From positions 139,383,741 to 139,447,740 of the forward strand of contig CM041465.1 in the NCBI GenBank assembly GCA_023213395.1: 64,000 nt of DNA, written 5' to 3'. Shown here one piece after another: positions 13,501-38,400 of the stretch. Position 1 is the stretch's first letter, and each line of letters begins with the position of its first letter. This stretch comes from Cycas panzhihuaensis (taxonomy: Eukaryota > Plantae > Cycadophyta). Made by a program: the position numbers and the translations under genes. Under the pieces are notes generated by a model. It was not told the origin of the DNA. It saw only the letters and a list, made by a program, of their open reading frames with translations, and ran no database searches.

Positions 13501-13926
13501 AAAAGCATGCTACTATAGAAGTTTTAGTTCAATGGAAAGGGATGTAATCAAAAGATGCAACATGGAAACCTCTTCACAAACTCTAATAATAGTTTTCAAA
13601 TTTTAAGTTTGAAGGGAAATGCTCTTCAAAGACGGAAGGCATATTAGGACCATTATGTCCTAATTATCTATTGTATAGAGGCATGCAATAGTCATAATAT
13701 ATAAATCATTGTAAACGTCATATAACTCATGTATTTATTTTTGTATATAATGAATCATCTTATATGCACCACTTAATAATATAATTAGGATAAGTCTCTC
13801 ATTTATATTTGTAATTTTTGTAGTCTGAAGGATATATTTGAATCTCTTGTAATTGAGATTTGCTCTTAAGGAGGTTGCCCCTTTGAAACAACTTATGATT
13901 GTTAGTGATTCCTTAGAATATTAACA
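10512..13926 (+). mobile_element. 5'-truncated degenerate chromovirus-type Ty3/gypsy (RT, RNase H, integrase, chromodomain, short 3' LTR at about 13642-13926)
   Basis: 'FILVLFNDILVY' (FFDD motif), 'GFLGLTSYYHKF', 'PFIIESNAS', 'KSIYEKEVLAI', 'YHP.TNG.TKVVNK', chromodomain 'VLVQWKG...DATW' at about 13520-13570. Confidence 0.85.
10841..11684 (+). mobile_element. Solo LTR (844 bp) with an internal tandem duplication of about 195 bp
   Basis: Termini TGATCC...GGATCA; 5-bp TSD ACATT (10836-10840 and 11685-11689); interrupts the host pol between 'PLTT' and 'KNNS'. Repeat units start at about 11086 and 11281; TATATAAA at 11521 suggests + orientation. Confidence 0.85.
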
Positions 13927-14034
13927 TACTCATGAATTTGGTAATCCTATGATTTTATTTATATTTTTTAATATATTATTATTTTTAATATTCATAATTA
14001 TAATTAGTATGATATTAATACTCCAACATGGCCT

Positions 14035-15133: not shown

Positions 15134-15203
<70 letters not shown>

Positions 15204-17275: not shown

Positions 17276-17387
17276 GGCTTTATAAAATAACCAATCTTAG
17301 GGAAGGCTAATAAGTAGACTATAGTATCAAGAACAAATGGAAAAACATCAATTCAAACTATTATTTTTAGTGGTATATTTTGGAATA

Positions 17388-19962
17388 TGTTTCTCGGCTT
17401 CCAGGAATGGATACAGAATCACCGACTCAGGTAAGTACAGGTATGTCTCTAGCATTATCATCACTGTTATTTACTGATTGTTTGCTTGCGTACCCGCATG
17501 TGTATGACTTTGTGGGCGGCCTGGTAGCCGTCCACACCTATTTTTAGCCTATGACGACTATAGCAGGGGCACACTCCTAGCGAGTGTGGCACCCTGGTGT
17601 CCATATTGCTTCCCGTGATCCGCCTCCTCGCCTGGATCCACTAGGTTCGCGCCACCTCCACCCGTGTGATGTCTCATCGTCGTTTGGTTAGCTTGCCACC
17701 TCATTTGGGGTCCTATTTCTGCTCCCGTGGGCCCGTTTGTTGGCTTGTTTGCTCCCAGGTGGGTGTCCTGGTTATCCATTAGTCCTTTCGGCTGTCTGCC
17801 CCCAGCCTGGACTGGTTGGTGGGCCCCATTTGTCGCTCAGTGCGTATCAATGAATTTTTATCTGGCCGGAATATCCGCAGATCTGCTAAAGTTTTGCCAG
17901 ACGACTGTCTCTGCTTGTTTTTTAAAATCCGTCGTGGCAATTTCGCATTTATTGTGAAACTGCCACGTGGTTCGCGCCTTTTCTCTCTTCCAGCTGTGCC
18001 CTAATCGCACGCTTTAGGGTTTTGCTTTAGTACTTAAACACTTTTTGGCTCATTCTCAAGGATTTTTTTGCTCACTTTTGGATTGACTCTCAGGAAAAAC
18101 ACTCTCCTGCTCTGCTCTCCTCTCTGCCATCGCAATCGGACTGCACTCTTCATACTGATGACTCTCCTTTGGCTTGGCTGAGACATTCTCCCAGCCCCTC
18201 AAACGCCTTGGAGAGGGCTCCTTTGAAGCGGTTTCCAGCTGTTTTCTACCCAGGCAGTCCACGAGCTCCCCGTTTGCAGGTGTTTCTGGTCCCGTCTCCG
18301 TAGCAGGGTCTCTAGCCTGCTCTATTCCAGATCTGGGTTGTTCTTTCAGCCCTCCTTCGCTGTCCTTTGGCTGAGGCAAATCCCTTGCCTCCCCTTCCCA
18401 GGTATTCTTCACTTTGTATTGGTTTTTTTGTGATATTTATACTTCAGCTCATTTGTTCCTATTTGTGGCTTGAGAGTTGGTTTTCCTCCCTCTTGAGGAC
18501 TGCTGTACCACTCTCTCGTGCTTCTTGCCTGCGTTTGCTATCGAAGGCAGCGGTGTGAGGGGTTGCATAGGCTTTGGAAGAGGAGCTGGGTGGATTCCGT
18601 ACCACCTTCCACGCTCCCCAAGTGGCTCTAAGCCCTCCAAAGCCTCCCTCTCGCCTCGTGCTGCCCTTGGCTCCCAAACGAGGGTTTGAAGGCTCCCGTG
18701 GGTTACCCAAACCAGCGCTGTCACAAGTTGCAGCGCTGATTTGGGACCCTTCATTCAGGTTTGGGTGCCTTCCATAGGTCCCAACCGCGGGTCCTTGCTT
18801 TGCCTTTGCTCCCCGGTCACCCAGTTTGCTCCCCATAGCATCCCGGTACCCCATGGGTATCCTTGGGTCTCTCTTGCCCTTGTTGCAGCCGTTTTCCAGC
18901 CTTGGTTCTTGACTTTCTCCTCGCTGCCTCATGGCTTTTGGGGGGAGGTTTGGGCACCATTTGCGGGAGGTAGGTCACTCCGAGGCTTGCCTTGTTGTTT
19001 CCTTTTACTTGGGTCATTTTCCTTTGGTGTTTTCCTTATTGGACTCACACTAACGCATATATATTTAGGCTCTTGTTTATGTTGCTAGACCTATATTGTT
19101 AGATCTTCGTGTCGCATGTTAGCCCTCTTCTTTCAGGAAGAGGGAGACCCTTTGTTGCTTGCAGGTACCTGAGACGCGCGGAGAACGTTGCCCGTTGGCC
19201 TCTCTACCGGTAAGTGCTCTTGCATGTGTCATGCTTTATGCTATTTCATTTACTAGCTAGCGTTTCCTTCTTTCCTTTGGTATCGCATTTACTTTCCGAG
19301 GAAGGTAAGGAAGCCCCCTTTCGCCAGCATTGCATCTCGCCTCACTGCACGTCACAAGTGGTTGAGTGTTCCTCGCGAAGGTCACGTCATCTCGCATGCC
19401 TTCGGCCCAGGTGCACACTTCATTCCTCTTCGCTCCCCTTGATTTGTTTCCTTTTATTCCTTCCTTAGTAATTAAGACATTGAAAGATTAAAAGGGAAAT
19501 TACTTTTGTATTCGTTCGCAATTTGTTTGCTTTACTGCATGTACCTTTTGTTATTCATAGGAAAGGTTGTAGGAGTTCTTCCCCCTTTTACCTTTCCTTC
19601 CTCCTCCTTAACCGTGCGAGCGCCACCGCTCAGACGCTCATACACCCGGTTAGGTTGCATAGGTTTGCCCTTGGCCTATCTCTATTAGGCTCTGTCTCTC
19701 TCCCTTCTGGCCATCCAAGGGTGGGAGGGTCCTACTTCCAAGCCAACCCCGGTTCGTCCTGCGTACCTTCGCCCCTTGCTCAAGGTGGCAAAGGGTCACC
19801 CAATAGTAGCTATACTCCATTGCAGATCCCGAACTCGCGCTCCGGTGTACGGGGCGCTCTGCGTGGTAGTTGCTTGCCTTATAGGTTCCACTTCCTGTCA
19901 TTTCATCGTTTTCTCTCCCCCGCACCTATCAGTCAGGTGGTTATCCCGTAGCAGCGCATCCA
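17388..19962 (+). repeat. 5' LTR (2575 bp)
   Basis: TGTTTC...ATCCA; direct repeat of 31370-33935. Confidence 0.96.
17962..18038 (+). promoter_or_regulatory. Candidate LTR core promoter: G-box GCCACGTGG (17962-17970), telo-box TAGGGTTT (18015-18022), TATA-like TACTTAAA (18031-18038)
   Basis: Motifs present in both LTRs and followed by a pyrimidine-rich leader. Function is inferred. Confidence 0.5.
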
Positions 19963-19963
19963 C

Positions 19964-19981
19964 TGGCGACCATACTGGGAT
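19964..19981 (+). other. Primer-binding site TGGCGACCATACTGGGAT (resembles the tRNA-Arg-type PBS of Tat/Ogre elements)
   Basis: One base after the LTR terminal CA; a decayed version is at 41358-41375 (minus) in the old copy. tRNA identity is from resemblance only. Confidence 0.85.
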
Positions 19982-20134
19982 CGCCAAGAAGGGAGCTAGT
20001 CTCGCTCTCTTCGGTTGGTTTTGCTACTCTTGTGTGATCCTTTCTATACCTATCCCGATCTCCACGTTGGGCAGCCCCCAACGCGTGCATTTTTCCATTC
20101 CTTCTCTTTTCCTAACATCGTTGGTTGACCTTGC

Positions 20135-23100
20135 ATGCGACGTTTCTTGCGTCGTTTGCGCGGCCTACCTCCTTTGTTAGAGGATCCCGAGTATAGCCTT
20201 CTTGCCTCATCAGATTCTGATCCGACTATGGAAGGGTACTCTTCCGAGTGGACTTACCACACTTCAGCCATGGAGACTCATGCTTTCCCTTCTGCTATTC
20301 CTGGGTCCACCCAAGAGGGTGAGGACCCCCTTTACTACCCAAATAACCAACACCCTTCTTTTGCTCCCCATCCTTCTACCCACGCTGTAGAAGGATCCGT
20401 TCCTCCTGAGGATTGCCATGCGATGGGCAATTTTTATGAGGAACTTTCCGATGGACATGTCTTGTTCGAGGTCCCGATCACCTCCTATGGGTATGTGGGG
20501 ACTCCTCCTGTTGACATGCTTGAGGCTCTTAATGAGCGCCGCCGTGCGACATGCGCTCAACCACGTCCCGGGTGGCTTGAGGGTGTCCTTCGTGGAGGAG
20601 CCTCTTCCTCCTCTGCTCCTCCACCTCATGCTTTGTCCTCATCCACCCTTCCTATGACAACAAACCCCTTCGTGCCTACACGTGCATCCCACTCATTTCC
20701 TGCAGTGGGGGCACGTGTGACACCTTCCATCCCTCATCAAGGTCCCAATACCTTAGGACCTTCTCACGGTGTGTCTTTCCCTCAATTGGGGGTTAGCATA
20801 CCCGCTCCCAATCCAACCAATGTGCCATCCCCTAACGTGGCACATGCTGCTCCTAGTAGGCCCATTGGCCCTACTAGCTTTCCAGTCACTAGTCATGTGG
20901 GATCTGCTCCCACGCATCCTCTAACCCAGCATGTTGGGGCTTCTTTCTATGCTCCTCCAGGGTATACTTCTCAACCTTGGGGGCAGGGTAGAGGAATCCG
21001 TCTTCCTGTTTATGGGGTGGATCCGCTACACCCATATGGAATTGCCCCACCTACGGGTGGCCCATATGGGCAAAACCCGGTTCCGCATCCCGTTTGTCCA
21101 TCCACCACTGTAGTCACATCTGTTGTGCCTTCGCAAGGGAACCTGGCTCCTTTCCAAGGCACCTATCCTCATGCCTCTTTTCAGCAAGGGGCGCTTCCTC
21201 AAGGAGGGGTGGGTGTTCCACCCCCACCCGTTCCTTGTGCGTTGCCTACTTTGACTTTCGTTGACCCTACGGTTCAGGCAAGGGCACGTCCCTTTATGGA
21301 CTTTAGGTCGACCCCTCTTTCAGTTGAGGCGTTGCGAACCAACTTGCCGCCTCATCCCCCTGAAGTTCCTCGGTTTGATGGAACTTGGTCGCAAGACCCA
21401 ACGGAGCATGTCCGTAGTTTCTCTATGGCATGCATCGATTACTAGGCTTACGACCATATTTTGATGAAGCTCTTTCCTCGATCCCTGCAGGGTGACGCCC
21501 TTAAATGGTTTTATCATCTCCCTGCCCACTCAATTCATTCATTCCAGCAATTGGTGGACGAGTTCATCAACTACTTTGATGTAGCTCGCCCATTCGAGAG
21601 CGGAATGAAATCCCTTCTTTCGCTCAAACAAGGTCACGATGAGATGAATCGTGACTTTGTGCAGCGATTCCATGACTTGCTTCACTCCACCAAGGCAACC
21701 TTGCCCGAGGAGTTGAAGCGAGACCTGTTCGTTAATGCACTTCGTCCCGAAGTCCACGTGGAAGTCCTCAAGATGGGGGTGACCACGTGTGATTCCGCGA
21801 TCGCTAAGTGCTTGGCGCTGGAGGCTATTGAGATCCAAGCGGGTCTCAAGAAACCTCTTAAGCCCTCACAACGTCGTGAGGCGCCACCCCCTACCAAAGA
21901 TACTAAACCTTCCCAACCGACGCGGTTTTCCTCTCATCCTACCGAGAGGACCCTAGATCCCCTCACATCTGCTATATGCTCGTTCGAGCGTACTATGAAG
22001 GAGCTCAAGCTTCAAGGCCCTTCATCTCCTACTTCAAACAAGCAAGTCCAACAAACTACTCAAGCTCTTCCCAGGAATGCGAACGCCCAGTCCTCTCAAG
22101 CGAGAAGGTCCGACCCTCCGCTTGAGAAGAAGTGGTGCTCCATTCATGGGGACTGCTTCCATGACGATTCGCGTTGTAGGGCCCAGCACCCAAAGGATGC
22201 CCCTCGGCGCGATTCCTCTCCCAAACGGGCCTCAAGGCCTAATTTGGATCAACCTGTTCACAAGGATCCGTTCCCTAAACACGGGGAACGTGATCGCAAC
22301 TCCCAACCTAAGAACAACCGTAACCGAGGAAGATCGCCTGATCCCCGTCCTTCCCGCCACAAAGGGAAGGGCGCTCAGAACTCTTCTTCCTCTTCCCGTT
22401 CTCCTAGCCGTCGTACCCCATCGCCTTCACGACCCCGGAACAGGGGGAAGAAGGTGATCCAGTTGCTTGAAGCAACTCCGACCTTTGCCCTTACACGATC
22501 TCAAGCCGCTAAGGAAGCGGCGGGAGCTGCTGGTCCTTCCGCTCCTTCTGACCCTCCTCCGGAGACCCTTCCTCCGGAAATCCCTCTCTTTCCCAAGGCC
22601 ATTCCTGTACGCCCGGGATGTTACGACTTTCGAAGGGCACTTACCCAACCTACCGGGAAGGGTAAGCCTTTCTCCGTCGTGGACGAGCTCCATACGGTGG
22701 CTGCAGGAATGTCCTTGATGGACGTTCTGAGGAGTTGTCCCAAGCAGCGGGCCCTCCTCCTGGAAGCTTTAGGATCGGGTGATGTACCTATCCACACTTT
22801 GGGTGTCGCCCAGGGTGGTGGGCCCGCTATCTCTTTCGATCCTAAGGATCTTCCTCTCGTCGGTGAAAGGGAACGTCAGTGGAACTTCCCATTCACCATC
22901 ATGATCGATACACCTGATTGTACCCTCCGAAGAACTGTTGTCGATAACGGTTCTTCTGTTAATGCCATACCCCTGCACGTCATGCAGGAGCTTGGTATTT
23001 CTGCCTTGGAACCCGTTCCGTGGCGATGCCAAGGGTACGACGGTAGCGAGAAGACCCCTCTGGGATCTGTCGCGATCCCGCTCACCCTTGAGGGCAAGAC

Positions 23101-26100
23101 CATTCTTGCCGATGTTGTAGTCCTCGACGTTGATATGGACTACAACCTCCTTCTAGGTCGTCCATGGCTCGACCAAATGGGGGCCGTGTGCTCGACCCTT
23201 TGGGGACAACTTAAATTCGTCCACGACGGACGGATGAGAGTGGTTTCCCGTGAACGTCCTTTTCCTAAACAAACCCGTTCCGCCAATTCAGCAAACCAAG
23301 GTCCATCTACTCATGCCTCGGCTTACTCTATTGCTATACCTAATCCGTCTGAAGAAGATCCCGCATCTTCTCCTTCTGGTCTCACGCGTTTTGCCCCTAT
23401 TGGTGTTGGGAGTTACGGGTACCTTGCTTCATTCAGCGATGACGAGTCGCTTGATGAAGACGAGGGTTGTCCTCACCCTGTCTCTTTCCTTCGCGCCAAT
23501 AGGTTGCACCTGCCTTGTTCTAGATCCCCGTCTAGGACCCCTCTTGTTAGTGAGGCTAGTTCCTCGTGCGTGTCGCACGTCATCGCTCGTGTTGACCCGC
23601 CCATTGCCAGTTCTTCTTTCTCATTACCCCCTGTAGGTGATGGTTTTGAGGAATTGCCTTTCACTCCTCCCGAGGAGCTCCTTTCTGGTTTCCCTTCAGA
23701 TCCCCGCAAAGGAGTCGAGCACCCCGACAGTCATCACAGTCCCGTTGCTCCTACTTCTTCTAGCGCTTCTTCTACTCGAAGTAAGGTCATCCATGGGGTG
23801 GATTATTTCGAGGATGACGAAGCCCTGCTTGAGCATCTAGCAGGCCTTGCGCCCAATTTGTCTTCTGGTCACCACCGGCTTGGTCACCAGAAGATCCTTG
23901 CGATCGGATCCACTCTCGCCGATCCGATCCCGTCTCCTATTCCTCCTCTTCCTGTTGATCTTGCCCCTCTCCACTTCGAGGAGGGCAATGCCATGTGCAC
24001 GGGGGCAACCCAAGACATAGTCTTGGCCTCGGGCAAGATCATTAAAGTTGGGTTGGAATGTTCTCCTGATGAGATAAGGGAATACTCCCTTCTGTTCCAG
24101 GAGTTTCGAGACATTTTTGCGTGGGATTATGCTGACATGAAGGGAATCGACCCCTCGATTGTCACTCATAACCTCACCACCCTTCCTGGCGCTCGCCCTG
24201 TGCGCCAGAAGCAGCGTCCTCTTCACCCGAAGCTCTCTGCCGCCGTCAAGATGGAGGTCGAGAAGCTCCTGGATGCTGGGCTCATCACTTCTATTGACTA
24301 CCCCAAGTGGGTCTCTAACATTGTTCCCGTTGCCAAAAAGAATGGGGTAATCCGTATATGTGTTGATTTTCGCGACATCAACAACGCTTGTCCTAAGGAC
24401 AATTTCCCGTTACCCTTTCTGGATCAGATCATTGATCGCACTGCCGGATTCGAAGTGATGTCCCTAATGGACGGCTTCTCCGGTTACAACCAAATTCAGA
24501 TCTCTCCCGAAGACCGCCATAAGATGGCCTTCACTACCCCTTGGGGCACCTTCGCCTACAAGGCGATGCCCTTTGGCCTTAAAAATGCAGGTGCTACCTA
24601 CCAGAGAGCCATGCATTTCATTTTCCACGACCTCATCAACGACACGTTGGAGGTCTTCATGGATGACATGATGGGTCTTTCCCGTGCGAGGGCCCATCAT
24701 CCTTCCGACTTGCGCGCCATCTTCTCACGATGTCGCGAGTATTACGTCAGTTTGAACCCACTTAAATGTGTGTTTGCCGTTACCTTGGGTAAACTCCTTG
24801 GATTCCTTGTATCCAAACAAGGAATTCAGATCGATCCTGACAAAGTCAGGGCGATCCTCGACATGCCGCCACCTAGAACTCAACGGCAGATCAAGTCGTT
24901 TCTAGGCAGGCTCAGTTTCCTTAGGCGCTTCTTAGCTGACTTCGCTGTGAGCGCTAAGCCCCTCACGAACCTGTTGAAGAAGGGAGCTCCTTTTGCCTGG
25001 TCTGACAAGACCCAAAAGGCCTTCGAAGGACTCAAGGAAGCCCTAGCTTCCGCTCCTACGCTGGCGCCTCCCCGATTCGATAGGCCCTTCGTCCTGTATA
25101 CCTCAGCGACTGACGAATCCCTGGGCGCTATGCTCGCTCAGGAGGACGATTCAGGAACTGAGAGAGCCATTTATTTCATCAGTCGCACCCTTGTGGCTGC
25201 CGAGCTTAACTATTCCCCTGCCGAGAAGGAATGCCTCTCCTTGGTCCACGCGACCAAGAAGTTTAGGCACTACTTGCTCGGTAACACTACCAAGGTGATC
25301 GTTCAATCCGATCCCTTGAGGTACTTGCTGACTCGTCCAGATTTGACGGGTAGGTCTGGCCGTTGGGCCGTCCTGCTCCAAGAATTTGATCTCCTTATCA
25401 TCACCCGGAAATCGAAGAAGGGCATGATAGTGGCCGAGCAACTCGCAGACGCCCCTATCCCTAACTCCTTCGATACTCCTGTTGACGACTCTCTCCCTGA
25501 TGAGGCTATCTTGGCGATTCAGGGAGCTCCTCCCCACCCACTCATCGATAATGAGTGGTACGGCGACGTAGTGCGGTATCTCACGCAGCAGCAATACCGC
25601 CTCGACGCTAGTAGCAAGGTTAAATCTCGCATCCGGACTTCTGCCAGGCAATACCTCCTCATGGATGAGGTATTGTACAAGAGGTCCTTCGATGGGATCC
25701 TTCTCCGCTGCGTCACTGCTGACGAAGCCGACCAGGTGCTTCGCGAATGCCACCACGGCATTTGTGGGGGTCACTTCGGGGGCCAGTACATGGCTCAAAG
25801 GATCCTTCGCATGGGCTACTTTTGGCCGTCTCTTTTTAAGGACGCTCACACCTTTGCTCTGAAATGTCGGCGATGTCAAGAGCACGTCAACGTTTCCCAT
25901 GTGCCTTCCGAGGCCTTACATCCCATTGTCTCGCCATGGCCCTTCGCTTAGTGGGGACTAGACCTCATTGGGGCTATCTTCCCACCTTCGTCGTCGCAGC
26001 ACAAGTTCATCTTGACTGTCACGGAATATTTCACCAAATGGGCGGAGGCCATCCCTTTGATCACTACTCCTAGCAAAACGATTGCCACGTTCATTTATGA

Positions 26101-26800
26101 GCATATCATTTGCCGTTTCAGGATCTCGGATGTCCTAATCACCGACAACGGAACCCCTTTTTGTAATAAGGAGGTGGATGAGCTTTGTGAGAGGTTCAAA
26201 ATCTCTCATAAGACTTCTTCCCCTTATTAGCCTCAGGCAAATGGCCAGGTGGAGTCTTTTAATAAGACTCTGGTCAACATTCTCAAGAAAACCGTCGCTC
26301 AATCCCAAAGGGATTGGCACTTTCAGTTGCCCTCCGCTTTGTGGGCTTATCGCACCTCTGTCCGTTCCGCCACGGGAATGACCCCGTTCTCCCTGGTCTA
26401 CGGTACTGAGGCGGTACTCCCGCTGGAGGTGGAGATTCCTTCCTTGCGGGTCTCCCTTCGAGGTTTCATCGACGACGAGTCGATCCGCCAGGCCCGCCTG
26501 CTGGACCTCGAAGCTTTGGATGAGAGACGCTTAGCCGCCTACCAGGCTAACCTAGCATCCAAAGCCCGCTCACAAAGGGCCCACGATAAACGCCTGCGTT
26601 CCCGCCCTTTGTTCCCTGGGGACTATGTCCTCAAGCTCGAATATCTCCATGACCGTTTGACCAAGTTCAAACCCCGGTGGGTTGGTCCTTTCATCATTAT
26701 CGAATCCCTCGATAATGGTGCTTACAGGATAGCCACCCTGGAGGGGCTCGAATTTGAGAAAGCCGTTAATGGGATGTTCCTTAAGAAGTTTTACGCTTGA
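20135..26800 (+). pseudogene. gag-pol: Single-frame gag-pol polyprotein (2222 codons) with three in-frame TAG stops and no frameshift
   Basis: ORFs 20135, 21461, 26012 and 26249 share one frame; stops at 21443-21445, 25949-25951 and 26228-26230. Gag 'RFDGTWSQDPTEH..KLFPRSLQGDALKWF', knuckle 'CSIHGDCFHDDSRC', protease 'VVDNGSS', RT 'ICVDFRDIN..MPFGLKNAGATYQR..FMDD', degenerate RH 'LYTSAT', integrase 'HHGICGGH..CRRC..WGLD..TDNG..PQANGQVE', C-terminal 'WVGPF'. Confidence 0.95.
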
Positions 26801-27440
26801 CCCTTCGGCGATTCCTTCGCCTCGCTCCGAAATGAGCCTAAACTACCATCTTAGGTTATCCCCATTCTTCCCAACCGCGGGTAGAATGGTAACTTAAGAT
26901 GGATCCTGTTTTGTCTTCCGGTTCCTTCCGCGGAACCCGCGTTCCCGTATCCTCTCGGGGACTCTTTTGTCGTCTTGTTTGGGCATCTCCCAATCAGGAG
27001 GACGCTTGGGGGCATTGTCGCTCCCCCTTTCCTGCCCGCGTTTCCTTCGCATATCCCGCTATGCTCTCCTATAGACATGTATGCCGCCCTGCTCCCTAAC
27101 CTCACACTTCTATATCGTCCCGCTCACGGCGTGTGTGTGTGCCCCTGTTAGGTGTGTGGTCATACATGGAAGGAAACGTGTGTATCACACAACAAAACAT
27201 CATAACATAAATCACCAACATAACATAACATAACACTCATTACACAAAAACAAATATGCATATCATCCACACATCATGCACAGCATCTCATATCCGAATG
27301 GGGTTCCAACCACCCCATCCATATATATATACATATCAAAATCATGTCATCATACATCCTGGGAAGCCGGTGTCCTTGCAGGGGGGGTACAATCATATGG
27401 CCCTATATATGACCCCCTGGAGGCCCGTGCTTTCCTCCGC

Positions 27441-29858
27441 CTAAGCTATATGCATGTCCCTCTGCCTGCCCCGCCTCCCGGGTGCCATCTCTGGTCTCTG
27501 TGATCCCTCTCCTGGGGACCACATGCCTCCGAGGCTCCTCCACAGGCCTCTGCGAGCCGCCCGCCCGCTCTCCTCGTCCCTAGGTCATCTCGGGGTCGCC
27601 ACCGTGTGGGTCCGTGTCCTGCTCCGGCTCGACCTCGAGACCATCTGTGCGACTAGTTGATCGTATCTGGCCTGGATACGATCCCGCTCTCCCCGGAGAG
27701 CCTCCTCTGTCGTCCTGAGACGCTCTGTGATGATTATCAGCTGGGTCCTGCTCTCGTTGTCTCCGCCTGCACCACCCTGTGCCTCTAGAGCCTGCACCCA
27801 TCCTCGCAGCTCGTCTCTCTCGCGTCATCCCGCTCGCGCCTCGCGCTATCTCTCTCCTGCTGCAGCTGTCTCTGGGATGTCACATGCTCTTGGGACTCTG
27901 CAACCCATATGTCCCTCGCCCTTACCAACGGGGCGAATTCCTCTCTGTGGGCTCCTGCCGCTCTAGGCTCATCACCTGCCTGGATGGGCGGTTGCGCCTC
28001 TGCATATACCTGAGGGAATATCTCCCTCGCCACAGCCTCTACCAGCCTCCTAATCTCTGCTGCACCTGCCAATGCCACATGCCATATGTCAGTCTATATC
28101 CCATCATATATGCTATGATCAAACCAAGCCAAACTTCTATTTGGATGCTGAATGACTCTGGAGGAGGTTAGGTCTCACCTACTGTGGGCCCGGGTCCCTC
28201 GGTCGCAAGATCCTCTCCTCCTGGCTCTCCGCCAGCTGCAGGTGCCTCATCCTCGGGCACCTCCTCTGCCTGGGTCCCTCTCCTCGTGGGGGTGGCCCCA
28301 GCTCTCGTCCCTACGGATCCCATCACGATCCGTAGCCTCCGGGCCCTAGTCACGGGTCCCTTAACCTCATCCTGTGCTCCAGATGGGCTTGCCTCCTCCC
28401 AGCCGGATGGACCCCTCACGGCCCCGCCTCTGCAGGTCGTGACGGGCCGGCCCCGCTATCTCCACTGTCTCCATCATCCCCGTCATCACTGCTGTCATCT
28501 CCCGCGGGCACTCCTGCTCCGCCCGCCTCGTCATCGCTATCCCACCTCACCGTCCTGTAGGGCTCAGCTATATAGTCTGGGAGGGTGAGGAGGTCTAGTG
28601 ATGTGGCCTCCACCGAGCGTCTGACATGAGCTCTATCCTCTGTCCCCCTCAGTTGAGTCTGCCACCTGTGGACCATCGGGGCCTGCTCTGTAATGGGGTG
28701 TGGTCCCCCTGCTGGTGCCACTGCAGTGAAGTGATAAAAAAACTAACACTGTAGCAGTGTGCTGTAGGATAGCCCCCCTCTGCCGGATGTCCTGATAGTA
28801 TCCAGCTATGCAACCAGGTTCACCGCTATCAGGGCAGCCCAGTCCATCCTCTCGCTGGCTTCGCAGCGGCGAACTGCATCCATCCATCCTCCTGGTACTT
28901 CCCTATAGTTCTGTCTCTGGGAAATCCGGAACAGAATGCACAGTATGACCATCTTCCTCACTCAAGGAATCCCTGACAACAGAACTGTCTGGAGGAGTGC
29001 TCCCCTCCGGTCCCATCTGCCAGCCTCGTGAAAATGTAGCCGCCTCTGTGTCTTTGCCTGCAGGCCGGGGCGTCCCGAGTCTCACCGGCCTCCCTGTCGC
29101 CGGAACCCCCAGTATCCGCCGGATGTCCCTCGGTGTGACAGTCACATCCCCCACCTGTGGTAGGTGGAATACATGCCTCCTCCTGTCCCAATGGGACACT
29201 ATATCCACTAGCAACCTCTGGTCGGACGTGTGCTGAGGTGTCCTGAGGGCCTTATACAGGCCGCACCTCTCCAACATGTCCCTGTCCTCCTGAGTCGTCA
29301 TCTCCAGGCAACTCAGCATGGCCATACCAATGTTCTCGCGGTTATCTACCGTGAGGACAGCCTGTTCACACCAAAAAACACTTCAGGTCAGTCTCATGTT
29401 AGCTATTGTCCTCTCTCTCTCTCTTGAATCTCTCTCTGCCTGAGATTTGGGGCCCTTTTGGCCCTCATGCCTCTTTTACGCCTTTGCCAGATCAAGACCA
29501 AACTTAGCGACTGCTTAAGTTTGCACGGTCCCGCGGCGACGCCCGGCCAACCATGATCTTGCACCGCGATCATTCTTGCAGATGAATCAGCGACCAAAAG
29601 GGGGTTTTACCCAAAACAAAAAAAAGTTTCTTCTGGTGGACCCCGTGGGGCCCATCGGGACCAGGGCCCCCTAATGTCTAGGTCTCCGCCTCTTTCTGGG
29701 TCCTATTCAGATCCCGGGAAGCCTTCCGTTGCCCATAAGGGGCACTAAAACTATGCAAATCACTCTTAAAAAAACTTCAAAAACCTTCAAACTTTGAACT
29801 TTATTTTGGGTCAGGTTTAGTGATATCCACTCACTGGATCTGGTCTCGCTATCGCCAT
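27441..29858 (-). pseudogene. Antisense three-exon gene encoding a plant mobile domain (PMD/MAIN-like, PF10536-type), an acidic linker and a coiled-coil C-terminus
   Basis: Exon 1 29858-29835 (MAIARPDP), intron GTGAGT..TGAACAG 29834-29362 (phase 0), exon 2 29361-28179, intron GTGAGA..TGGCAG 28178-28066 (phase 1), exon 3 from 28065 to about 27441. PMD-like motifs 'LLVDIVSHWDRRRHVFHLPQVGDVTVTPRDIRRILGVPATGRPV' and 'MDWAALIAVNL...LLQC*FF'. About three frameshifts and several stops as assembled. Confidence 0.85.
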
Positions 29859-29988
29859 GTCGTCTAGTCGGTCGTGCTGGCTCTCTCTGCTCTCCGATCC
29901 GACGGCCCGAGCTCCCTCTGCGTGCCTCCAAAGTTGGGCGGCGCTCCGCTACGTAGGGAAATGGCTCTGGTTTCTCACGAGAGCCGGT

Positions 29989-30053
29989 GAAAATGAATTC
30001 ATTTTCTCGTCGATTTCCTTATATAAAGTGGGCCCCAACGGGCACTTCCTCCG
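29989..30053. promoter_or_regulatory. Candidate bidirectional internal promoter
   Basis: Palindromic TTATATAA (30019-30026); perfect 18-bp palindrome GAAAATGAATTCATTTTC (29989-30006) placing an Inr-like TCATTTT about 31 nt downstream on the minus strand; TGGGCC next to the TATA; homologous TATA and TGAATTTATTTTCACC at 4082-4123 in the old copy. Confidence 0.62.
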
Positions 30054-30542
30054 TTTTTGGTCCCGCGCCAGTCGTTGGGACCGTCTCGTCGCCTTGGTCG
30101 CCTTTGCCTTGGGCCTACCGCTGCCGACAGTTCGTCGATGCCCTTGCTGTCCGCCCTCGTGGGGGCATTTATGGTGCCTCGTTGTCGCATTTTTTTTGCC
30201 AGGGCCCCTTCTGCGCCGCTTTGCGCGCTGCTCCCGAGCCTACCCGAGTTTATACTCGTTTGGCTCGTTTCGCCGCCCCGGACTCATTTCCGTGGTCCTT
30301 TTCCGCTCCTGGGATCCCCAAAGGGAATGCCCCCGCCTGGGGGCATGTTTCGCTCCCTGGAGTGACCTTTTGGCATCCCAGGAGGGTTTTCCCTTCCGAC
30401 CACTCTCCGCGGGTGATCGGATGGCTTGTCCTCGCCCTGGGTAACCTCATTGCTAGGTCCTCCTACCCTTCACGGCCACTCTGTGTTTGCCTTTCGAGTA
30501 TTGCTTTCACCCCCCATTGACTGCTTGGATTCTGTGTCGCCG

Positions 30543-30966
30543 ATGTCTGTCTACATCTTTACCGACGGCGGAAGCCGCGGTAACCCTGGACCTTCTGCTG
30601 CTGCATGGATTCTCTGCAGCCCGTCTGGACATGATCTCCTCCGCTCTGGGATCTTCCTCCCAGAGGCTACCAACAACGAAGCCGAGTATACAGCTGTTAT
30701 CGAAGCCCTTACCGATGCTCTCCGTTTTCACCATGGACCCATTGTTTTGCTTTGCGACTCTCAAGTTGTGGTGTCTCATCTCACCCAGGTTTACCAGGTG
30801 CGATGCCCTCACTTGAGGACTCTTGCTTCTGCCGCCAAATCCCTCCTGGCCAATTTTTTCTTCTGTTGATATCTAGCATATCCCTCAGGCCCTCAACGCT
30901 GAGGCAGATAGTCTTGTTCACCTCATCCTTGAGCGCTGCCTTTCTCTCCTTGCCGACCGCCCCTGA
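30543..30966 (+). pseudogene. Stand-alone archaeal/bacterial-type ribonuclease HI (aRH) ORF; frame may originally extend to 31272
   Basis: 'IFTDGGSRGNPGP', 'ATNNEAEY', 'CDSQVV', then, after a 1-nt frameshift in the T-run at 30854-30859 and a TAG at 30874-30876, 'HIPQALNAEADSL'. All four acidic catalytic positions are recognisable. Confidence 0.92.
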
Positions 30967-31359
30967 GGCTTGCCTGGCCTTCCCGTCGCCCAAGCCCCAG
31001 GTCGTCTGCCACTTCGCTTCGCGATCTGCTCGCACCTCCGAAACTGGGTTACTAATGAGGTAAAACTATGGTACCCACTATTTGCTCTCTATGTGACCAT
31101 GCATGCTCCTTTGCATTCATTGTGGTGGGGGCAGCCCCCTCGCCTGACTCTTTCTTCCGCCCGGTTCCTGGTGGCTCATAGCGGCCCTATGTTGTCTCCA
31201 CCACCGCCAGATCCACGCTGCCCGCCACGACACTCGCCCAAGACCCTTGCCTACTGTTATGATCTTGATTGATATATCTATATACACATATGCTACTGAC
31301 AGTTGTGTTGCCAGCATTCGCCATCGCACCAGGCTTCCGAGCCGTGAGGCTCTACTGCC

Positions 31360-31369
31360 AAGGGGGCAG
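31360..31369 (+). other. Polypurine tract AAGGGGGCAG
   Basis: Immediately upstream of the 3' LTR TG. Confidence 0.88.
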
Positions 31370-33935
31370 TGTTTCCTGGCTTCCGGGAATGGATACGGAA
31401 TCACCGACTCAGGTAAGTGCAGGTATGTCTCTAGCATTATCATCACTATTATTTACTAATTGTTTGCTTGCGTACCCGCATGTGTATGACTTTGTGGGCG
31501 GCCTGGTAGCCGTCCACACCTATTTTTAGCCTATGACCACTATAGCAGGGGCACACTCCTAGCAAGTGTGGCACCCTGGTGTCCATATTGCTTCCCGCAT
31601 CTGCCCTCCTCGCTCCTGGATCCACTAGGTTCGCGCCACCTCCACCCGTGTGATGTCTCATCGTCGTTTGGTTAGCTTGCCACCTCATTTGGGCTCCTAT
31701 TTCTGCTCCCGTGGGCCTGTTTGTTGGCTTGTTTGCTCCCGGGTGGGTGTCCTGGTTATCCATTAGCCCTTTCTACTGCCCCGCCTCACTGGGTGGTTGG
31801 TGGGCCCCATTTGTCGCTCGGTGTGTGTATCGGGGAATTTTCGCCATCACGGAATATCCGCCAGATCGCTAAAGTTTCAAAGAAGACGACTGCCTCGCTT
31901 GTTTTTAAAATCCAGGTGGCAATTTCGATTTATCAAAAGCGCCACGTGGTTCGCGCCTTTTCTCTCTTCCAGCTGTGCCCTAATCGTACGCTTTAGGGTT
32001 TTGCTTTAGTACTTAAACACTTTTTGGCTCATTCTCAAGGATCTTTTTGCTCACTTTTGGATTGACTCTCAGGAAAAACACTCTCCCGCCTCCTCATCTC
32101 ATCTGCTCACTACAACCGACCTCACTCTTCATACAAGGCCCGACTCTCCTTTGGCTTGGCCGAGACATTCTCCCCCTCAAACGCCTTGGAGAGGGCTCCT
32201 TTGAAGCGGTTTCCACTGCTTTCTACCCAGTGCATCCACGAGCTCCCGCTTGGTGTGTTTCTCGTCCCGTCTCCGTAGCAGGGTCTCTAGCCTGCTCTAT
32301 TCCAGATCTGGGCTGTTCTTTCAGCCCTCCTTCGCTGTCCTTTGGCTGAGGCAAATCCCTTGCCTCCCCTTCCCAGGTATTCTTCACTTTGTATTGGTTT
32401 TTTTTGTGATATTTATACTTCAGCTCATTTGTTCCTATTTGTGGCTTGAGAGTTGGTTTTCCTCCCTCTTGAGGACTGCTGTACCACTCTCCCGTGCTTC
32501 TTGCCTGCGTTTGCTGTCCAAGGCAGCGGCGTGAGGGGTTGCATAGGCTTTGGAAGAGGAGTTGGGTGGATTTCGTACCACCTTCCACGCTCCCCAAGTG
32601 GCTCTAAGCCCTCCAAAGCCTCCCTCTCGCCTCGTGCTGCCCTTGGCTCCCAAACGAGGGTTTGAAGGCTCCCGTGGGTTGCCCAAACCAGCGCTGTCAC
32701 AAGTTGCAGCGCTGATTTGGGACCCTTCATTCAGATTTGGGTGCCTTCCATAGGTCCCAACCGCGGGTCCTTGCTTTGCCTTTGCTCCCCGGTCACCCGG
32801 TTTGCTCCCCATAGCATCCCGGTACCCCGTGGGTATCCTTGGGTCTCTCTTGCCCTTGTTGCAGCCGTTTTCCAGCCTTGGTTCTTGACTTTCTCCTCAC
32901 TGCCTCGTGGCTTTTGGGGGGAGGTTTGGGCACCATTTGCAGGAGGTAGGTCACTCCGAGGCTTGCCTTGTTGTTTCCTTTTACTTGGGTCATTTTCCTT
33001 TGGTGTTTTCCTTATTGGACTCACACTAACGCATATATATTTAGGCTCTTGTTTATGTTGCTAGACCTATATTGTTAGATCTTCGTGTCGCATGTTAGCC
33101 CTCTTCTTTCGGGAAGAGGGAGACCCTTTGTTGCTTGCAGGTACCTGAGACGCGCGGAGAACGTTGCCCGTTGGCCTCTCTACCGGTAAGTGCTCTTGCA
33201 TGTGTCATGCTTTATGCTATTTCATTTACTAGCTAGCGTTTCCTTCTTTCCTTTGGTATCGCATTTACTTTCCGGGGAAGGTAAGGAAGCCCCTTCGCCT
33301 GTCCGCATCTCGCTCCCGGTACGTCGCGCGAAGTGGTTGAGTGTTCCTCGCGAAGGTCACGTCGTCTCGCACGCCTTCGGCCCAGGTGCACACTTCATTC
33401 CTCTTCGCTCCCCTTGATTTTTCCTTTTATTCCTTCCTTAGTAATTAAGACATTGAAAGATTAAAAGGGAAATTGCTTTTGTATTTGTTCACGATTTGTT
33501 TGCCTTACTGCATGCACCTTTTGTTATTCGTTGGAAAGGTTGTAGGAGTTCTTCCCCCTTTTACCTTTCCTTCCTCCTCCTTAACCGTACGAGTGCCCTG
33601 CTTCCCGCATCGCTCATACACCCGGTTAGGTTGCATAGGTTTGCCCTTGGCCTATCTCTATTAGGGTCTGTCTCTCTCCCTTCTGGCCATCCAAGGGTGG
33701 GAGGGTCCTACTTCCAGGCCAACCCCGGTTCGTCCTGCGTACCTTCACCCCTTGCTTAAGGTGGCAAAGGGTCACCCAATAGTAGCTATACTCCATTGCA
33801 GATCCCGAACTCGCGCTCCCAAGACGGGCGCCTCAATGGTAGTTGCTTGCCTTATAGGTTCCACTTCCTATCATTTCATCGTTTTCTCTCCCTCGCACCT
33901 ATCAGTCAGGTGGTTATCCCGTAGCAGCACGTCCA
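31370..33935 (+). repeat. 3' LTR (2566 bp)
   Basis: TGTTTC...GTCCA followed by TSD GAATA. Confidence 0.96.
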
Positions 33936-34329
33936 GAATAATTAAATACATTCTATTTATCCTATTTTGGACCACCATGGAAGTTTTATAAATAATGCTT
34001 TTAATATTGTAGAAGAATCTAGGACCTATTATAAGAATAGAAATAAGAATCATATAATAGTGACTTGTAGTAAGGTCATGGAGCTAAATAACCAATTCAC
34101 TTAGTGTTAATAAATCCTTTGGAGTCTTTGTTAATCATGTAATATAAGATACTTGATCATTTATTTATATTCCATTCTATTTATACTTTTCATATTATTA
34201 TTAGTTTTAGATAAATTAATGTATTAATACAATTTATCAATTATTATTCTACATTTTTGTTATGTACATACATATGTTTTTTTATTTTTATTTATTTATT
34301 TTGTTTTGTGTGCTCATGAGAGAGAGAGG

Positions 34330-35010
34330 TATTTAGATATAGGTCAAAATCAAAACTTGCAAGAAACCTAAGGTAACTAATATAGTTAAGTAAGTTAACT
34401 AAGCATTAAAGTTAAGATAAGCTAGAAAGAAATTTAGATTTAAAAAATAAGGAATGTAACTGAAATCAACTAGTACAGTAAGCAGTGTTTCGATTTAAAA
34501 GTAATAGGTATTAGATAGTAATTATGGCTATGGACAAGTTTTATGGCAAGCCAAAACTTAGGTAATGAAATAAATTTATGAATATTTAAATTAGTTATAG
34601 GGATAAAAGAAATTCAAATTCAAAAAATAAGCTCATTTTACTCTCAAAGAGTATAGAATAGGAGAGAACATCTCTAAATAATAAATTTGATGATAATGGT
34701 ATTTTATATACCACTATTTAAATACTAATATGTGTCATTTAGTATATGTTGACTCCTTTGTCATGGTGGGTCTACAACATGCCCTTCCCTTTCAAGAGAA
34801 ACACTATACCCACAAAGCTCAAGATAGTGATCAACAAACTCTTAGGACTACCAAGTCACATCCTCTAATAACAATCCCTTCTACTTAATGAGGTATCCTA
34901 TCATTATTTTGGATCAAAGTCTCTTACGTCATATCTCAAGGATGATCTATGGTTCTAATTGTAGAAGTTTAAAGCATGGAGTAAACTATGTGAGAAGCAT
35001 AGACCAATGC
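34330..35010 (-). mobile_element. 3'-end fragment of a chromovirus-type Ty3/gypsy (chromodomain remnant, PPT, start of LTR at 34779)
   Basis: Minus strand 'K*KGLLLEDVTW' at about 34850-34890, then GAAAGGGAAGGG and TGTTGTAG. Left boundary uncertain. Confidence 0.55.
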
Positions 35011-35039
35011 TACTTAGACCAAAAGGATTTGACTAAATT

Positions 35040-35405
35040 ACGAATAACATCTCATTCTCATAAAATCTTTTTTGTTTATAATACATGATAAGCACTTATG
35101 TAAAATCCTAAAAGGAATATTAATTTCCTTATGATTGACACATTTAAGGTGGGTGGTGTAACCCCCAATGACACACCAAACTCACATTCTAAAGAATTAA
35201 TAATCATTAGAATATAATAATAAAGTGGAGAGGCTAAAAACCTAAGTTATGAGAAACATAACCATTAATTATTAACACTCCCTAGTAATTTTTATTACAT
35301 TTACTCTAACATATAAATCATCATTGAAAGTCTAAAAGGGGTAAATGTTAGTGGTTTGGTAAAGATATTAACTAATTGTTCTCCTATAAAACCTCTTTAA
35401 TTTGA
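35040..35405 (-). mobile_element. 3'-end fragment of a Ty1/copia element (RNase H C-terminus, PPT, LTR start near 35277)
   Basis: Minus strand 'EQLVNIFTKPL', then AGGGAG and TGTTAA. Left boundary uncertain. Confidence 0.55.
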
Positions 35406-38400
35406 AACTAATAAGCTTTAGGTAGTATTCTGGGATGACAATGGTCCATTTTCCTATTCTCCCTATTAAGTCAGACTAGGCCATCAAATAACACAATGGG
35501 CCTAATTGAACTATAATATGTGTAGTATTACCAAGGAGTTAATGTTGTAGATTCTTCATGGTAAACACCAATACTAGGCATTCCTTCTTAGCTGGGGGAT
35601 AGTTTAACTTAGCCATTATGAGAGTACAACTTATGAAGTAGATGACTCTTTCAACCTTAAAGTTGTCTTCTTAAGCAAATATGACACCAACAGATTCATC
35701 AATGGTTAAGGTATAAAGGATAAAGGGTTAATCAAATAAAGGGGGGCCAAAATGGGGGCTAAAATGAGAGCTTTCCTAAGCTCTTGAAAGACCACTTGGG
35801 CTCTAGCGGTTCTCTTTTTAAACAAGTTAGTTAGTGGTTTTTCATTGATAATGAAATCTGCCAAAAAGTGTTGTAAGAAACATAATTACCTAAAAAATGA
35901 CTAGATTTATCATTGCATCTTAGGGGGAAATGTCTTAATTATGGCTTTGAACTTATTTGGTTCAACATTGATTCCTTCTTATGATATGAGGAATCCTAAA
36001 AGTTTGCTAATTATCACTGCAAAGACATATTTAATCAGATTTAGGCTAACATGGTATTTGTCACACCTAGTGAAAATATTCCTTAGGTCTACAAGGTGAT
36101 TGGCCCTCTTATGGGAAAGGCCTATTAGGTCATCCATAAAGACCCTAAGAATCTTATTAATAAGGTCATGAAATATGAATCACATGTCCCTATAATAAGT
36201 TACCCTAGTATTCTTTAAGCCAAAGGGTATTGCGTTATATGCAAATGTTCCCTAAGGAGTGGTAAAATGCCATTTTGTGGTGATCCTCGAGGGATATTTA
36301 GATTTGATTATATCTAGAGAAGCTATCCATTAAGGACATGACCTCAAATCCTATTGTATGATCAATAATTTAATTGATAAATAATAATAAGAAGTTGTCT
36401 TTAGGACATGCATTATTGATATCCTTAAAGTCAATATAAATCCATATGGTCTCATTCCTTTTAGCAACCAGAACTATGTTGGACACCCACTTCAAGTAGT
36501 CAATAAAAGTGATGAGACCCATATTATGTAGCTTCTCCACTTCCATCTTGACCATGGCTAATATTTTAAGGAATAATAGATGTTATTTTTGTTGGACGGG
36601 TCGAGCATCTAGAACTATTGTAAGATTATAGGTGATAATATTAGGGTTAATGTCCTTCATATCAAAGTAGTCCCATGCAAACACATCATGAAACTAATGG
36701 TAGAGTTTTGTATACTCCTTAACCTCCTAATATGAGTATTCGACACCAATCTTGATGATCTTATCAAGGGAAAGGATAACATCCTTATCCATCCCCACAC
36801 ACAAGACATTCCCTTCTTAAAAGTAAGGGGGAGCTTGGTTAATAGGTAGATCATGTGGGATGATTACTTTGTTAGGATCAACTAAGGAAGAATTGATGGA
36901 TAAACACTTACAGAAACCCAGCTTGTGATGATTGAAATGTAATTTAGGTAAGGACCCTATTAAATGCTCTAATAATGCCTCATCATTCTCAAAGCAATCT
37001 ATCGTATATATAGTCTTACTAGTAAGAGGTTATAGAGGTGTAATAGGTTAATAGTGATCAAACAACTAATCTACATAATAAGGTAATACCTCTAATAATT
37101 TAGAGTGCACTCTCATTATAAGCCTTCTCTTTGTTTGGGCTAGAGAATGTCAAGGGGGTTTAGGGTTGCAGATGATGGACTCATCATGAGAGGAGATGGA
37201 TTATAAATCTTTTTTATTATCACATATTAATAGGGATTGGCTAGGTCCTTTGGACAAGGGATTGTGTGCTAATTGGTTTCCTATATACCTAAGCAAGTTA
37301 ATGGTGCATGGTAGGTGGGGTAAGATTGAAGGGGAGTCTAACACATATCCTAAAGATCTGTCATCTCCACCCCAGGGGATCCTCCCTTAGAATGTGGCTT
37401 GGATCAAAGGAAGGGTGGGATGCCCCCCAAGCACATCTTTAGAAGAAGTTGGACTCACTCAATCGAGGTGCCTATTATATATGATTTGGGATGAATGGTA
37501 AGCCATCCATGCCCTAAGGTAAGGGGATTCCTATCTTAGAGGGAAAGTGGGTGATTATAATGGGGAAACACTTAAAGCATATGAATTTGGGCCAAATTGA
37601 GGAGGGTGTCAATTAGTAATAATTGAGGGGTGTCAATTTGTAATAATTCCCTTCTTGTAATGTTGAGGAAGGAAACTTGATGTGGCGGTTCCTCATACCT
37701 ATCGTTAGACTCCTTATTACTAAGAATGACTAGAAAGTCATAACTCCCAACCCTGATGGGAGAAAAGTGTATAAGGTTCAATTAAGAGGGAGGAACTCCT
37801 TCCCTTTCATAGGGTACTTCATCCTCAAGAACCCCATGATAGATGGATCGAAGGGATCTTCCTCCCTATCTATGGCTCTAAAAATTGCTTGGCATGGTTG
37901 GTGAGATGGGTACATAAGTGGTGGCTCTTAAGTAACAAATTTATTTTTCCCTTGGTGGATAAATTTAAGTTGGCCTTATCATAAAGAGTAAACTGCTTCC
38001 ATTTGGTCTAACCAAGGCTGACCCAATAAGATGTTATAACTGGGATCAATGTCTAAGACAATGATGTTTGTTCATATGGCTTTATCTTAGAGGGAAAGAG
38101 GGAGGGTCACTATCCCCAAGGGTACCTTCTTACTCCTATCATACCCTTTGCATCTCCAAGGGATGGGTTTTAGGGCCTCTATGCCCAACTTTCCTAACAT
38201 ACACACTAGCATAGCATTAACTAAGGAATTGTTATCTACAATAGTCCTCTTTAGGGCAAAGTTAGGCATCTTAATTATAATTATGAAAGGATAGTACCAA
38301 TGGAGTTTCCTATCCTTAGTCGATGGGAGGTCATGAGGGTCAAATATAATGAGAGTGGACCTTCATGATGAAGAAGTACCTATGGTATAGATGGGTGTAT

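What the first reader, a model, noticed from the sequence alone, without database searches (positions are those of the whole stretch)
25080..31272. Retrotransposon with a split RNase H system: dead RNase H in Pol, stand-alone RNase HI gene 3.7 kb downstream
Seen: the Pol RNase H reads 'LYTSAT' where Ty3 elements have LYTDAS, and 'VIVQSDP' where they have V.TDH. It is followed directly by integrase, with no second RNase H between RH and INT or between PR and RT. Both older family copies show the same ('LYTLTI' at about 35710, 'LYSSST' at about 53200). A complete D-E-D-D RNase HI with its own ATG (30543) lies just before the PPT, separated from pol by an antisense gene. Established: Tat elements carry an extra archaeal-like RNase H whose position varies by lineage; Ogre and Retand have it fused between RH and INT, and basal Tat lineages differ, so a post-INT position alone may not be new. 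Inference: an essential replication enzyme is supplied as a separate polypeptide from a separate transcript, so it would need its own route into the particle. This may represent a pre-fusion stage of the dual-RNase H architecture.
Basis: partly seen in the sequence, partly recalled or inferred. Interest (0 to 1): 0.88.

Follow-up and report, generated by a model that had tools for sequence, protein, structure and literature searches.

The report
Known Tat retrotransposon, stand-alone RNase H
This is a slightly decayed copy of a plant Tat-type LTR retrotransposon whose own RNase H has lost its catalytic residues and whose working-type RNase H sits as a small separate gene after integrase; the layout is real, but it is already described for gymnosperms as TatIII or "post-integrase".

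Summary
The sequence features are real. A 16.5 kb LTR retrotransposon (17388-33935, 5-bp target duplication) carries gag-pol in one frame. Its native RNase H reads S-E-Q-E where Ty3 has D-E-D-D. No second RNase H lies inside Pol. The only archaeal-type RNase H (aRH) in the 64 kb starts at its own ATG (30543), 3.7 kb past the pol stop and beyond an antisense PMD gene.

Two corrections:
- The aRH is not complete here. A frame change near 30856-30869 and a TAG at 30874 cut off the fourth catalytic Asp.
- gag-pol has three premature stops, so this copy is dead.

The architecture is published:
- Gymnosperm TatIII (Neumann 2019).
- "Structure #3", with native RH degraded whatever the aRH position (Biryukov and Ustyantsev 2023).
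- "Post-integrase", with a solo aRH ORF (2026).

- The start Met is conserved in three relatives.
- Every + frame between pol and aRH holds 26-32 stops.
- Three RNA-like public runs have contigs on PMD, aRH and U3 but none on integrase. This hints at expression separate from pol.

"Pre-fusion stage" cannot be decided here.

This scan noted the same cassette on other DNA of this genome many times, and one follow-up also judged it already described.

The parts
17383..17387 (.). Target-site duplication GAATA (left); the right copy is at 33936-33940
   Evidence: Flank comparison
17388..19962 (+). 5' LTR (TG...CA), 95.8% identical to the 3' LTR
19964..19980 (+). Putative primer-binding site TGGCGACCATACTGGG next to the 5' LTR
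   Evidence: Read from the sequence. The tRNA type was not tested
20135..26800 (+). gag-pol in one frame (Retrotrans_gag, protease, RT, native RH, integrase). Premature TAG at 21443, 25949 and 26228; natural stop TGA at 26798
24998..25387 (+). Native Ty3-type RNase H domain with a degraded catalytic core (S-E-Q-E in the D-E-D-D columns). LYTSAT at 25094, VIVQSDP at 25295
   Evidence: Pfam RT_RNaseH/RT_RNaseH_2. Alignment to Ty3 structures. Alignment to relatives
25718..26800 (+). Integrase (H2C2 zinc domain, core, SH3-like end), interrupted by two TAG codons
27441..29858 (-). Antisense accessory gene with a Plant Mobile Domain and a charged, coiled-coil-like tail. It is decayed or intron-containing. 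Conserved coding blocks are colinear with old copy B
   Evidence: PMD hit for 28903-29325. tblastx colinearity of 27603-29383 with 6409-4781. Outer limits are taken from scan note s1-836477 and the contig cover
29990..30028 (.). Palindrome GAAAATGAATTCATTTTC followed by TATATAAA, between the PMD and aRH genes. Candidate shared promoter region
   Evidence: Sequence. Function not tested
30543..30966 (+). Stand-alone archaeal-type RNase HI (aRH) gene, about 140 codons. D, E and D motifs are in the ATG frame. There is a frame change near 30856-30869 and a TAG at 30874. The fourth Asp motif is at 30877-30915. Natural stop TGA at 30964
   Evidence: Pfam RVT_3 7e-13 and RNase_H 4e-12. Halobacterium RNase HI 4E19 5e-18. 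HMM 4.7e-40. Breaks
31360..31369 (+). Polypurine tract AAGGGGGCAG
31370..33935 (+). 3' LTR

Best explanation
This is one dead, moderately young copy of a Tat-lineage Ty3/gypsy LTR retrotransposon. It has the 'post-integrase' architecture (REXdb TatIII; structure #3 of Biryukov and Ustyantsev).

In this lineage the native RNase H next to RT is retained only as a non-catalytic, tether-like domain. The catalytic RNase H is an acquired archaeal-type RNase HI, encoded as a ~140-codon gene of its own in the 3' region. It lies head-to-head with an antisense PMD gene.

Inferred mechanism:
- The aRH is translated from its own ATG on an mRNA distinct from the gag-pol message.
- That mRNA probably starts in the roughly 0.7 kb spacer between the two genes.
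- The aRH then has to join the reverse-transcription complex in trans.

Shown: domain content, order, catalytic-residue status, the separate ORF and the conserved start codon.
Inferred: the separate promoter, trans-assembly and activity.
For: Element anatomy:
- LTRs, TSD, PBS and PPT.
- Gypsy domain order.

RNase H status:
- Native RH has lost three of four catalytic residues against Ty3 structures.
- Relatives show the same loss.
- There is a single aRH in the whole window, outside Pol. It matches archaeal and bacterial RNase HI at 5e-18 with D, E and D aligned.

Separate ORF:
- Each + frame between the pol stop and the aRH ATG has 26-32 stops.
- Met sits at the same position in relatives P0004, P0010 and P0070.
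- Full-length solo relative P0009 is 142 aa.
- One run's contig regains similarity to this copy exactly at 30543.

Relatives:
- The Pol relatives that are colinear over 96-100% of the query lack RVT_3, whereas most angiosperm Tat polyproteins listed carry it.
- The RT-RH tree puts the element in the Tat group, outside the angiosperm dual-RH clade.

RNA hints:
- Three RNA-like runs hold contigs on 26800-31800 but none on 26000-26799, while DNA-like run X5 covers everything.
- A 473-nt skip in the PMD 5' part is seen in X2 only.

Literature describing exactly this class: PMC6317226, PMC10508981, PMC13468544, PMC4408406.
Against: - This copy's aRH is broken, and the two old family copies in the window show no recognisable aRH. 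Function therefore rests on relatives and the literature.
- The runs are only guessed to be RNA. They are contigs without strand or ends, and they come from coded organisms.
- No labelled TatIII or Tat H/I reference sequences were available, so clade membership rests on architecture plus an unlabelled tree.
- The host organism is not identified.
Confidence: 0.85

Rival explanations
1. The aRH is not a free protein. A spliced subgenomic mRNA joins a gag or pol exon to an acceptor upstream of 30543, so aRH is made as a fusion that enters the particle with Gag-Pol.
For: - The 2015 description placed the aRNH at the very C-terminus of a putative Pol (PMC4408406).
- The 2026 paper calls the point controversial (PMC13468544).
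- The aRH frame is open for 42 codons upstream of the ATG.
- From my own knowledge, splicing is known in related plant elements: the Ogre intron and spliced env-class transcripts.
Against: - No joint from at or before 26800 to 30417-30543 appears in three RNA-like runs. Joints near 30435-30438 lack AG ends.
- Family variants diverge in 30477-30542, and one contig regains similarity exactly at the ATG.
- Met is conserved in relatives.
- No contigs lie on integrase in those runs.
- Contigs cannot prove absence.
Confidence: 0.1
2. The aRH cassette is a dispensable or decaying passenger. RNase H activity for replication comes from the host or from residual activity of the native domain.
For: - aRH is broken in this copy.
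- It is undetectable in old copies B and C although their PMD remnant is detectable.
Against: - The native RH lacks three of four catalytic carboxylates.
- aRH keeps 45-50% identity to cellular RNase HI with the catalytic motifs aligned. That is hard to keep without selection.
- The lesions here match the neutral decay seen in gag-pol of the same copy (three stops).
- The literature finds aRH throughout the lineage (PMC10508981).
Confidence: 0.04
3. The aRH belongs to an unrelated insertion, for example a LINE fragment with an RNase H, that landed in the 3' region of this copy by chance.
For: Plant L1 elements also carry archaeal-like RNase H (cited in PMC10508981).
Against: - No RT, poly(A) or target duplication surrounds it.
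- DNA-like run X5 holds the block at high copy number together with the rest of the element.
- Scan notes report the same PMD/aRH pair in many other windows of this genome (unchecked leads).
- The position matches the published structure.
Confidence: 0.01

Closest known systems
TatIII (REXdb, Neumann et al. 2019) = Tat lineage III (Ustyantsev et al. 2015) = structure #3, clusters Tat H/I (Biryukov and Ustyantsev 2023) = 'post-integrase' structure (Plants 2026)
   Same: - Ty3/gypsy Tat element with the aRH after integrase.
- Native RH with a degraded catalytic core.
- Antisense PMD extra ORF in the 3' region.
- aRH treated as a solo ORF.
- Long LTRs and a long internal region.
   Different: Nothing essential. 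The texts I could read do not spell out the order integrase, antisense PMD, aRH, or the head-to-head spacer with a TATA palindrome. Figures were not available. Clade membership by RT tree against their references was not tested.
Angiosperm Tat (Ogre, Retand) with the retrovirus-like dual RNase H
   Same: - Same degraded native RH motifs (LYLS.S/T..., E kept).
- Same archaeal-type aRH.
- RT-RH about 50% identical.
   Different: There the aRH is fused between RH and integrase inside Pol (RVT_3 in the polyprotein). Here it is a separate gene 3.7 kb downstream. The window element lies outside that clade.
Retroviral RT (polymerase, connection/tether, RNase H)
   Same: Analogous division of labour: an inactive RH-fold tether next to RT, and an acquired catalytic RNase H.
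   Different: - In retroviruses the two are one polypeptide.
- The acquired RH comes from a different RNase H clade (PMC10508981).
- Here the catalytic part is unlinked.
Archaeal/bacterial type 1 RNase HI (Halobacterium 4E19, LC11-RNase H1 3U3G, Rv2228c N-domain 3HST)
   Same: - About 140-aa single-domain enzyme.
- Aligned D, E and D motifs, and a C-terminal (R/Q)..N..AD motif.
   Different: It is encoded inside a retrotransposon, and in this copy it is interrupted.

Membership tests
Tat lineage of Ty3/gypsy LTR retrotransposons | Gypsy domain order PR-RT-RH-INT between LTRs with a TSD | tested here: met
Tat lineage of Ty3/gypsy LTR retrotransposons | An additional archaeal-type RNase H (aRH) is present | tested here: met
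   RVT_3/RNase_H. PDB RNase HI hits. HMM hit 4.7e-40
Tat lineage of Ty3/gypsy LTR retrotransposons | Native RH catalytic core degraded | tested here: met
   S-E-Q-E in the DEDD columns
Tat lineage of Ty3/gypsy LTR retrotransposons | RT groups with Tat elements in a phylogeny | tested here: inconclusive
   It groups (SH-aLRT 100) with 116 Tat-like polyproteins, away from four canonical gypsy sequences. No labelled reference set or Athila outgroup was available
TatIII / structure #3 'post-integrase' | aRH downstream of integrase, and not between PR-RT or RH-INT | tested here: met
TatIII / structure #3 'post-integrase' | aRH is a separate ORF rather than part of Pol | tested here: met
   26-32 stops per + frame between the pol stop and the aRH ATG. 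The antisense gene lies in between. Met is conserved
TatIII / structure #3 'post-integrase' | Antisense PMD extra ORF in the 3' part (lineage III, PMC4408406) | tested here: met
   PMD hit on the minus strand. Conserved in old copy B
TatIII / structure #3 'post-integrase' | Host is a gymnosperm; RT clusters with Tat H or Tat I references | not testable with these tools
   Organism names are coded.
Type 1 RNase H (active enzyme) | All four catalytic carboxylates D-E-D-D in one intact reading frame | tested here: not met
   D, E and D are in the ATG frame. The fourth D is only in a shifted frame, behind TAG 30874. This copy cannot encode an active enzyme

The most novel reading that the evidence does not exclude
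The solo aRH and the antisense PMD gene form an internal, divergently transcribed two-gene unit with its own promoter, around the TATA palindrome at 29990-30028. It is expressed independently of the LTR-driven gag-pol RNA. The catalytic RNase H of a retroelement would then be supplied in trans from a subgenomic message. That would settle the published 'part of pol or separate ORF' disagreement, and it would pose a packaging problem with no known parallel among LTR retroelements.
Probability: 0.45. Interest if true: 0.5.

Novelty: already known. Interest (0 to 1): 0.27.

Why it matters
The class matters because it is a natural case in which the catalytic RNase H of a retroelement is uncoupled from RT. 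The authors who described it say openly that they do not understand how a separate-ORF aRH can work (PMC10508981).

This window adds no new kind of element. It gives a clean anatomical example showing that aRH cannot be part of Pol by simple translation, and a hint from public runs that the 3' cassette is expressed without pol. Either point is a reason for a targeted transcript study, not a discovery in itself.

Tried and rejected
- aRH in the old copies. tblastn at low stringency, six-frame reading and an HMM with filters off found nothing in copy B (expected near 4030-3600, minus strand) or copy C. Only a 36-aa, 28% tblastx trace lies at 3849-3742. These copies are too decayed to say whether aRH was there.
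- Complex prediction of Pol RT-RH (24248-25480) with the intact 108-aa part of aRH. It gave no verdict (score 0.00), which is no evidence either way.
- The look-up of encoding contigs for the closest aRH relatives (P0004, P0070).
- Selection test on aRH. Only the best-supported differences are listed: two synonymous, one non-conservative (Cys to Arg) and two milder replacements. That is too few for dN/dS, and no DNA of other copies was at hand.
- Pfam on the other antisense ORF pieces and on the PR-RT spacer returned nothing useful.
- Supplementary text of the 2015 paper is not held, so the drawn order of aRH and PMD in lineage III could not be checked.
- Joints near 30435-30438 and the 27441-to-30435 skip were considered as splice sites. 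They were rejected because they lack GT..AG ends and carry replacing letters. They look like differences between family variants.
Full report
**Anatomy**

The window holds a GC-rich block (54% GC, CpG observed/expected 0.72) inside AT-rich, CpG-depleted DNA (30-32% GC, CpG o/e 0.09).

The block is an LTR retrotransposon:
- LTRs at 17388-19962 and 31370-33935. Both are TG...CA and they are 95.8% identical; most differences are transitions.
- A 5-bp target duplication, GAATA.
- A primer-binding-like site next to the 5' LTR, and the polypurine tract AAGGGGGCAG next to the 3' LTR.

From 20135 to 26800 one reading frame carries Retrotrans_gag, a weak Ty3 protease match, RVT_1, RT_RNaseH/RT_RNaseH_2 and the integrase zinc domain and core. 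It is interrupted by premature TAG codons at 21443, 25949 and 26228. This copy is therefore no longer coding-competent.

At 4.2% LTR divergence it is roughly 2 to 10 million years old. The range depends on whether a grass-like or a gymnosperm-like substitution rate is used; both rates are from my own knowledge.

**The native RNase H**

LYTSAT lies at 25094 and VIVQSDP at 25295. In the HMMER alignment to the Ty3 RT/RNase H structures 4OL8 and 7Q5B:
- the first catalytic Asp column is Ser,
- the Glu is kept,
- the third column (TDH in Ty3) is Gln.

In a MAFFT alignment with canonical gypsy RH (CDAS, TEKE, TDHA, VADHLSR) the fourth column is Glu (IVAEQLA). The core therefore reads S-E-Q-E.

The two older family copies read LYTLTI and LYSSST at the first motif. 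Unrelated gypsy remnants in the same window keep D, or the N expected from deamination.

The same alignment shows that this degradation is not special to this element. Angiosperm Tat polyproteins with an internal aRH have it, and so does a clade of 12 polyproteins without an internal aRH.

**The acquired RNase H**

Pfam finds RVT_3 (7e-13) and RNase_H (4e-12) in the ORF that contains ATG 30543.

The 108 residues from that ATG match Halobacterium RNase HI (4E19, 5e-18), LC11-RNase H1 (3U3G) and the Rv2228c RNase H domain. The Asp of FTDGG, the Glu of NNEAEY and the Asp of CDSQ are aligned.

An HMM built from 57 solo RNase HI relatives, run with filters off on all six frames of the 64 kb, hits only this place (4.7e-40). 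It also gives a weak continuation in another frame at 30856-30933. So there is no aRH between protease and RT, none between RH and integrase, and none detectable in the old copies.

The ORF is not complete, contrary to the finding:
- The ATG frame ends at TGA 30867.
- The C-terminal motif with the fourth Asp (HIPQALNAEADSL, 30877-30915) is in a different frame and follows TAG 30874.
- The natural stop is TGA 30964.

These two lesions fit the neutral decay seen in gag-pol of the same copy.

**Is aRH a separate gene?**

Several points say it is.
- Between the pol stop (26798) and the aRH ATG, each + frame has 26-32 stop codons.
- The interval contains an antisense gene. It has a Plant Mobile Domain match (28903-29325), and its coding blocks are colinear with the old copy B (27603-29383 against 6409-4781).
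- The closest aRH relatives in the protein libraries are short decayed ORFs whose Met sits at the same place: MSVYIFTDGG here, MALFIYTDGG, MTLLIFTDSQ and MVFLIFTDGS in the relatives. One relative is a full-length solo protein of 142 aa.
- Pol relatives fall into two classes. Polyproteins that are colinear over 96-100% of the RT-RH-integrase query lack RVT_3. Most of the angiosperm Tat polyproteins listed carry RVT_3, and their best local alignments cover only about 74% of the query.

**Public runs**

No run is on record as RNA.

Three small runs, guessed to be RNA, come from three studies and three coded organisms. They hold contigs across 26800-31800, which covers the PMD gene, the aRH and the start of the 3' LTR. 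They hold nothing on 26000-26799, the end of integrase. The DNA-like run X5 covers every bin.

The similarity classes of the laid contigs are distributed alike in all four runs. The integrase gap is therefore not explained by divergence.

A 473-nt skip (29351 to 29825) at the highest depth in X2 is absent from X5. This fits an intron in the 5' part of the antisense PMD message and fits the run being RNA.

No joint connects pol to aRH. In X2 a contig loses similarity at 30476 and regains it exactly at 30543, the ATG.

These are contigs without strand or ends. I take them as a hint, not proof, that the 3' cassette is expressed apart from gag-pol.

A palindrome plus TATATAAA at 29990-30028 lies between the two genes. 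Its function is untested.

**Comparison with what is known**

- Ustyantsev et al. 2015 (PMC4408406) described gymnosperm Tat lineage III, with the aRNH furthest downstream and an antisense PMD extra ORF at the 3' end.
- Neumann et al. 2019 (PMC6317226) define TatIII as gymnosperm elements with aRH after integrase.
[quoted passage not shown] They report that native RH is degraded in all aRH-bearing structures regardless of aRH position. They remark that it is unclear how aRH works from a separate ORF.
- The 2026 Plants paper (PMC13468544) names the structure 'post-integrase', draws a solo aRH ORF, and notes conflicting reports on whether it is part of pol.

The finding's central claim is therefore already in print.

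**The 'pre-fusion' idea**

- The 2023 paper favours the fused form as ancestral.
- The 2026 tree puts post-integrase clusters at the base of the seed-plant branch that leads to fused forms.
- In my RT-RH tree of 121 sequences the window element is its own deep branch inside the Tat group, outside the 104-row clade of mostly angiosperm Tat polyproteins, all but one with an internal aRH.

This is compatible with either direction of change.

**Limits**

- The organism is coded. A gymnosperm host is inferred only from the architecture and the literature.
- The complex prediction gave no verdict.
- The scan's notes list many windows of this genome with the same PMD/aRH cassette. One earlier follow-up reached the same 'already described' verdict.

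Noticed in passing
window 9132-10505 and 35392-40486 (minus strand), around 10506-17387 and 33936-35391: Three-level nesting. Old family copy B runs from gag to RH at 40486-35392 and resumes at the same Pol residue (about 1317-1320) at 10505. All 24.9 kb in between is therefore inserted. The young element sits inside a further, different element whose gypsy RH remnant lies at 11722-12129.
   Followed up: partly
window 1-17387 and 33936-64000 versus 17388-33935: Extreme contrast in base composition. The young element has 54% GC and CpG o/e 0.72. The flanks, including older copies of the same family, have 30-32% GC and CpG o/e 0.09. This is as expected from long-term deamination of methylated cytosines.
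   Followed up: partly
window 29351-29825: In run X2 a contig at depth 461 skips 473 nt in the 5' part of the antisense PMD gene. The skip is absent from DNA-like run X5. It is a possible intron, but the exact ends as laid are not CT..AC.
   Followed up: no
window 27441-30435: One contig in run X3 joins 27441 to 30435 with 36 other letters in between. This suggests a family variant lacking the PMD gene but keeping aRH.
   Followed up: no
window 49294-54708: Old family copy C (+ strand) has a 2.6 kb insertion inside RT (50034-52618). Unrelated gypsy remnants lie on the minus strand downstream (56611-57198, 62472-63460).
   Followed up: no
window 15105-15203: (CT)n microsatellite with TCTA-type units at its start.
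   Followed up: no
proteins P0156-P0158, P0174-P0178: A highly repeated clade of about 2150-2200-aa polyproteins from JGI contigs, with up to 980 members per cluster. They have a degraded native RH but no aRH in the polyprotein. This may be another Tat group with aRH outside Pol. Their source organism is unknown.
   Followed up: partly
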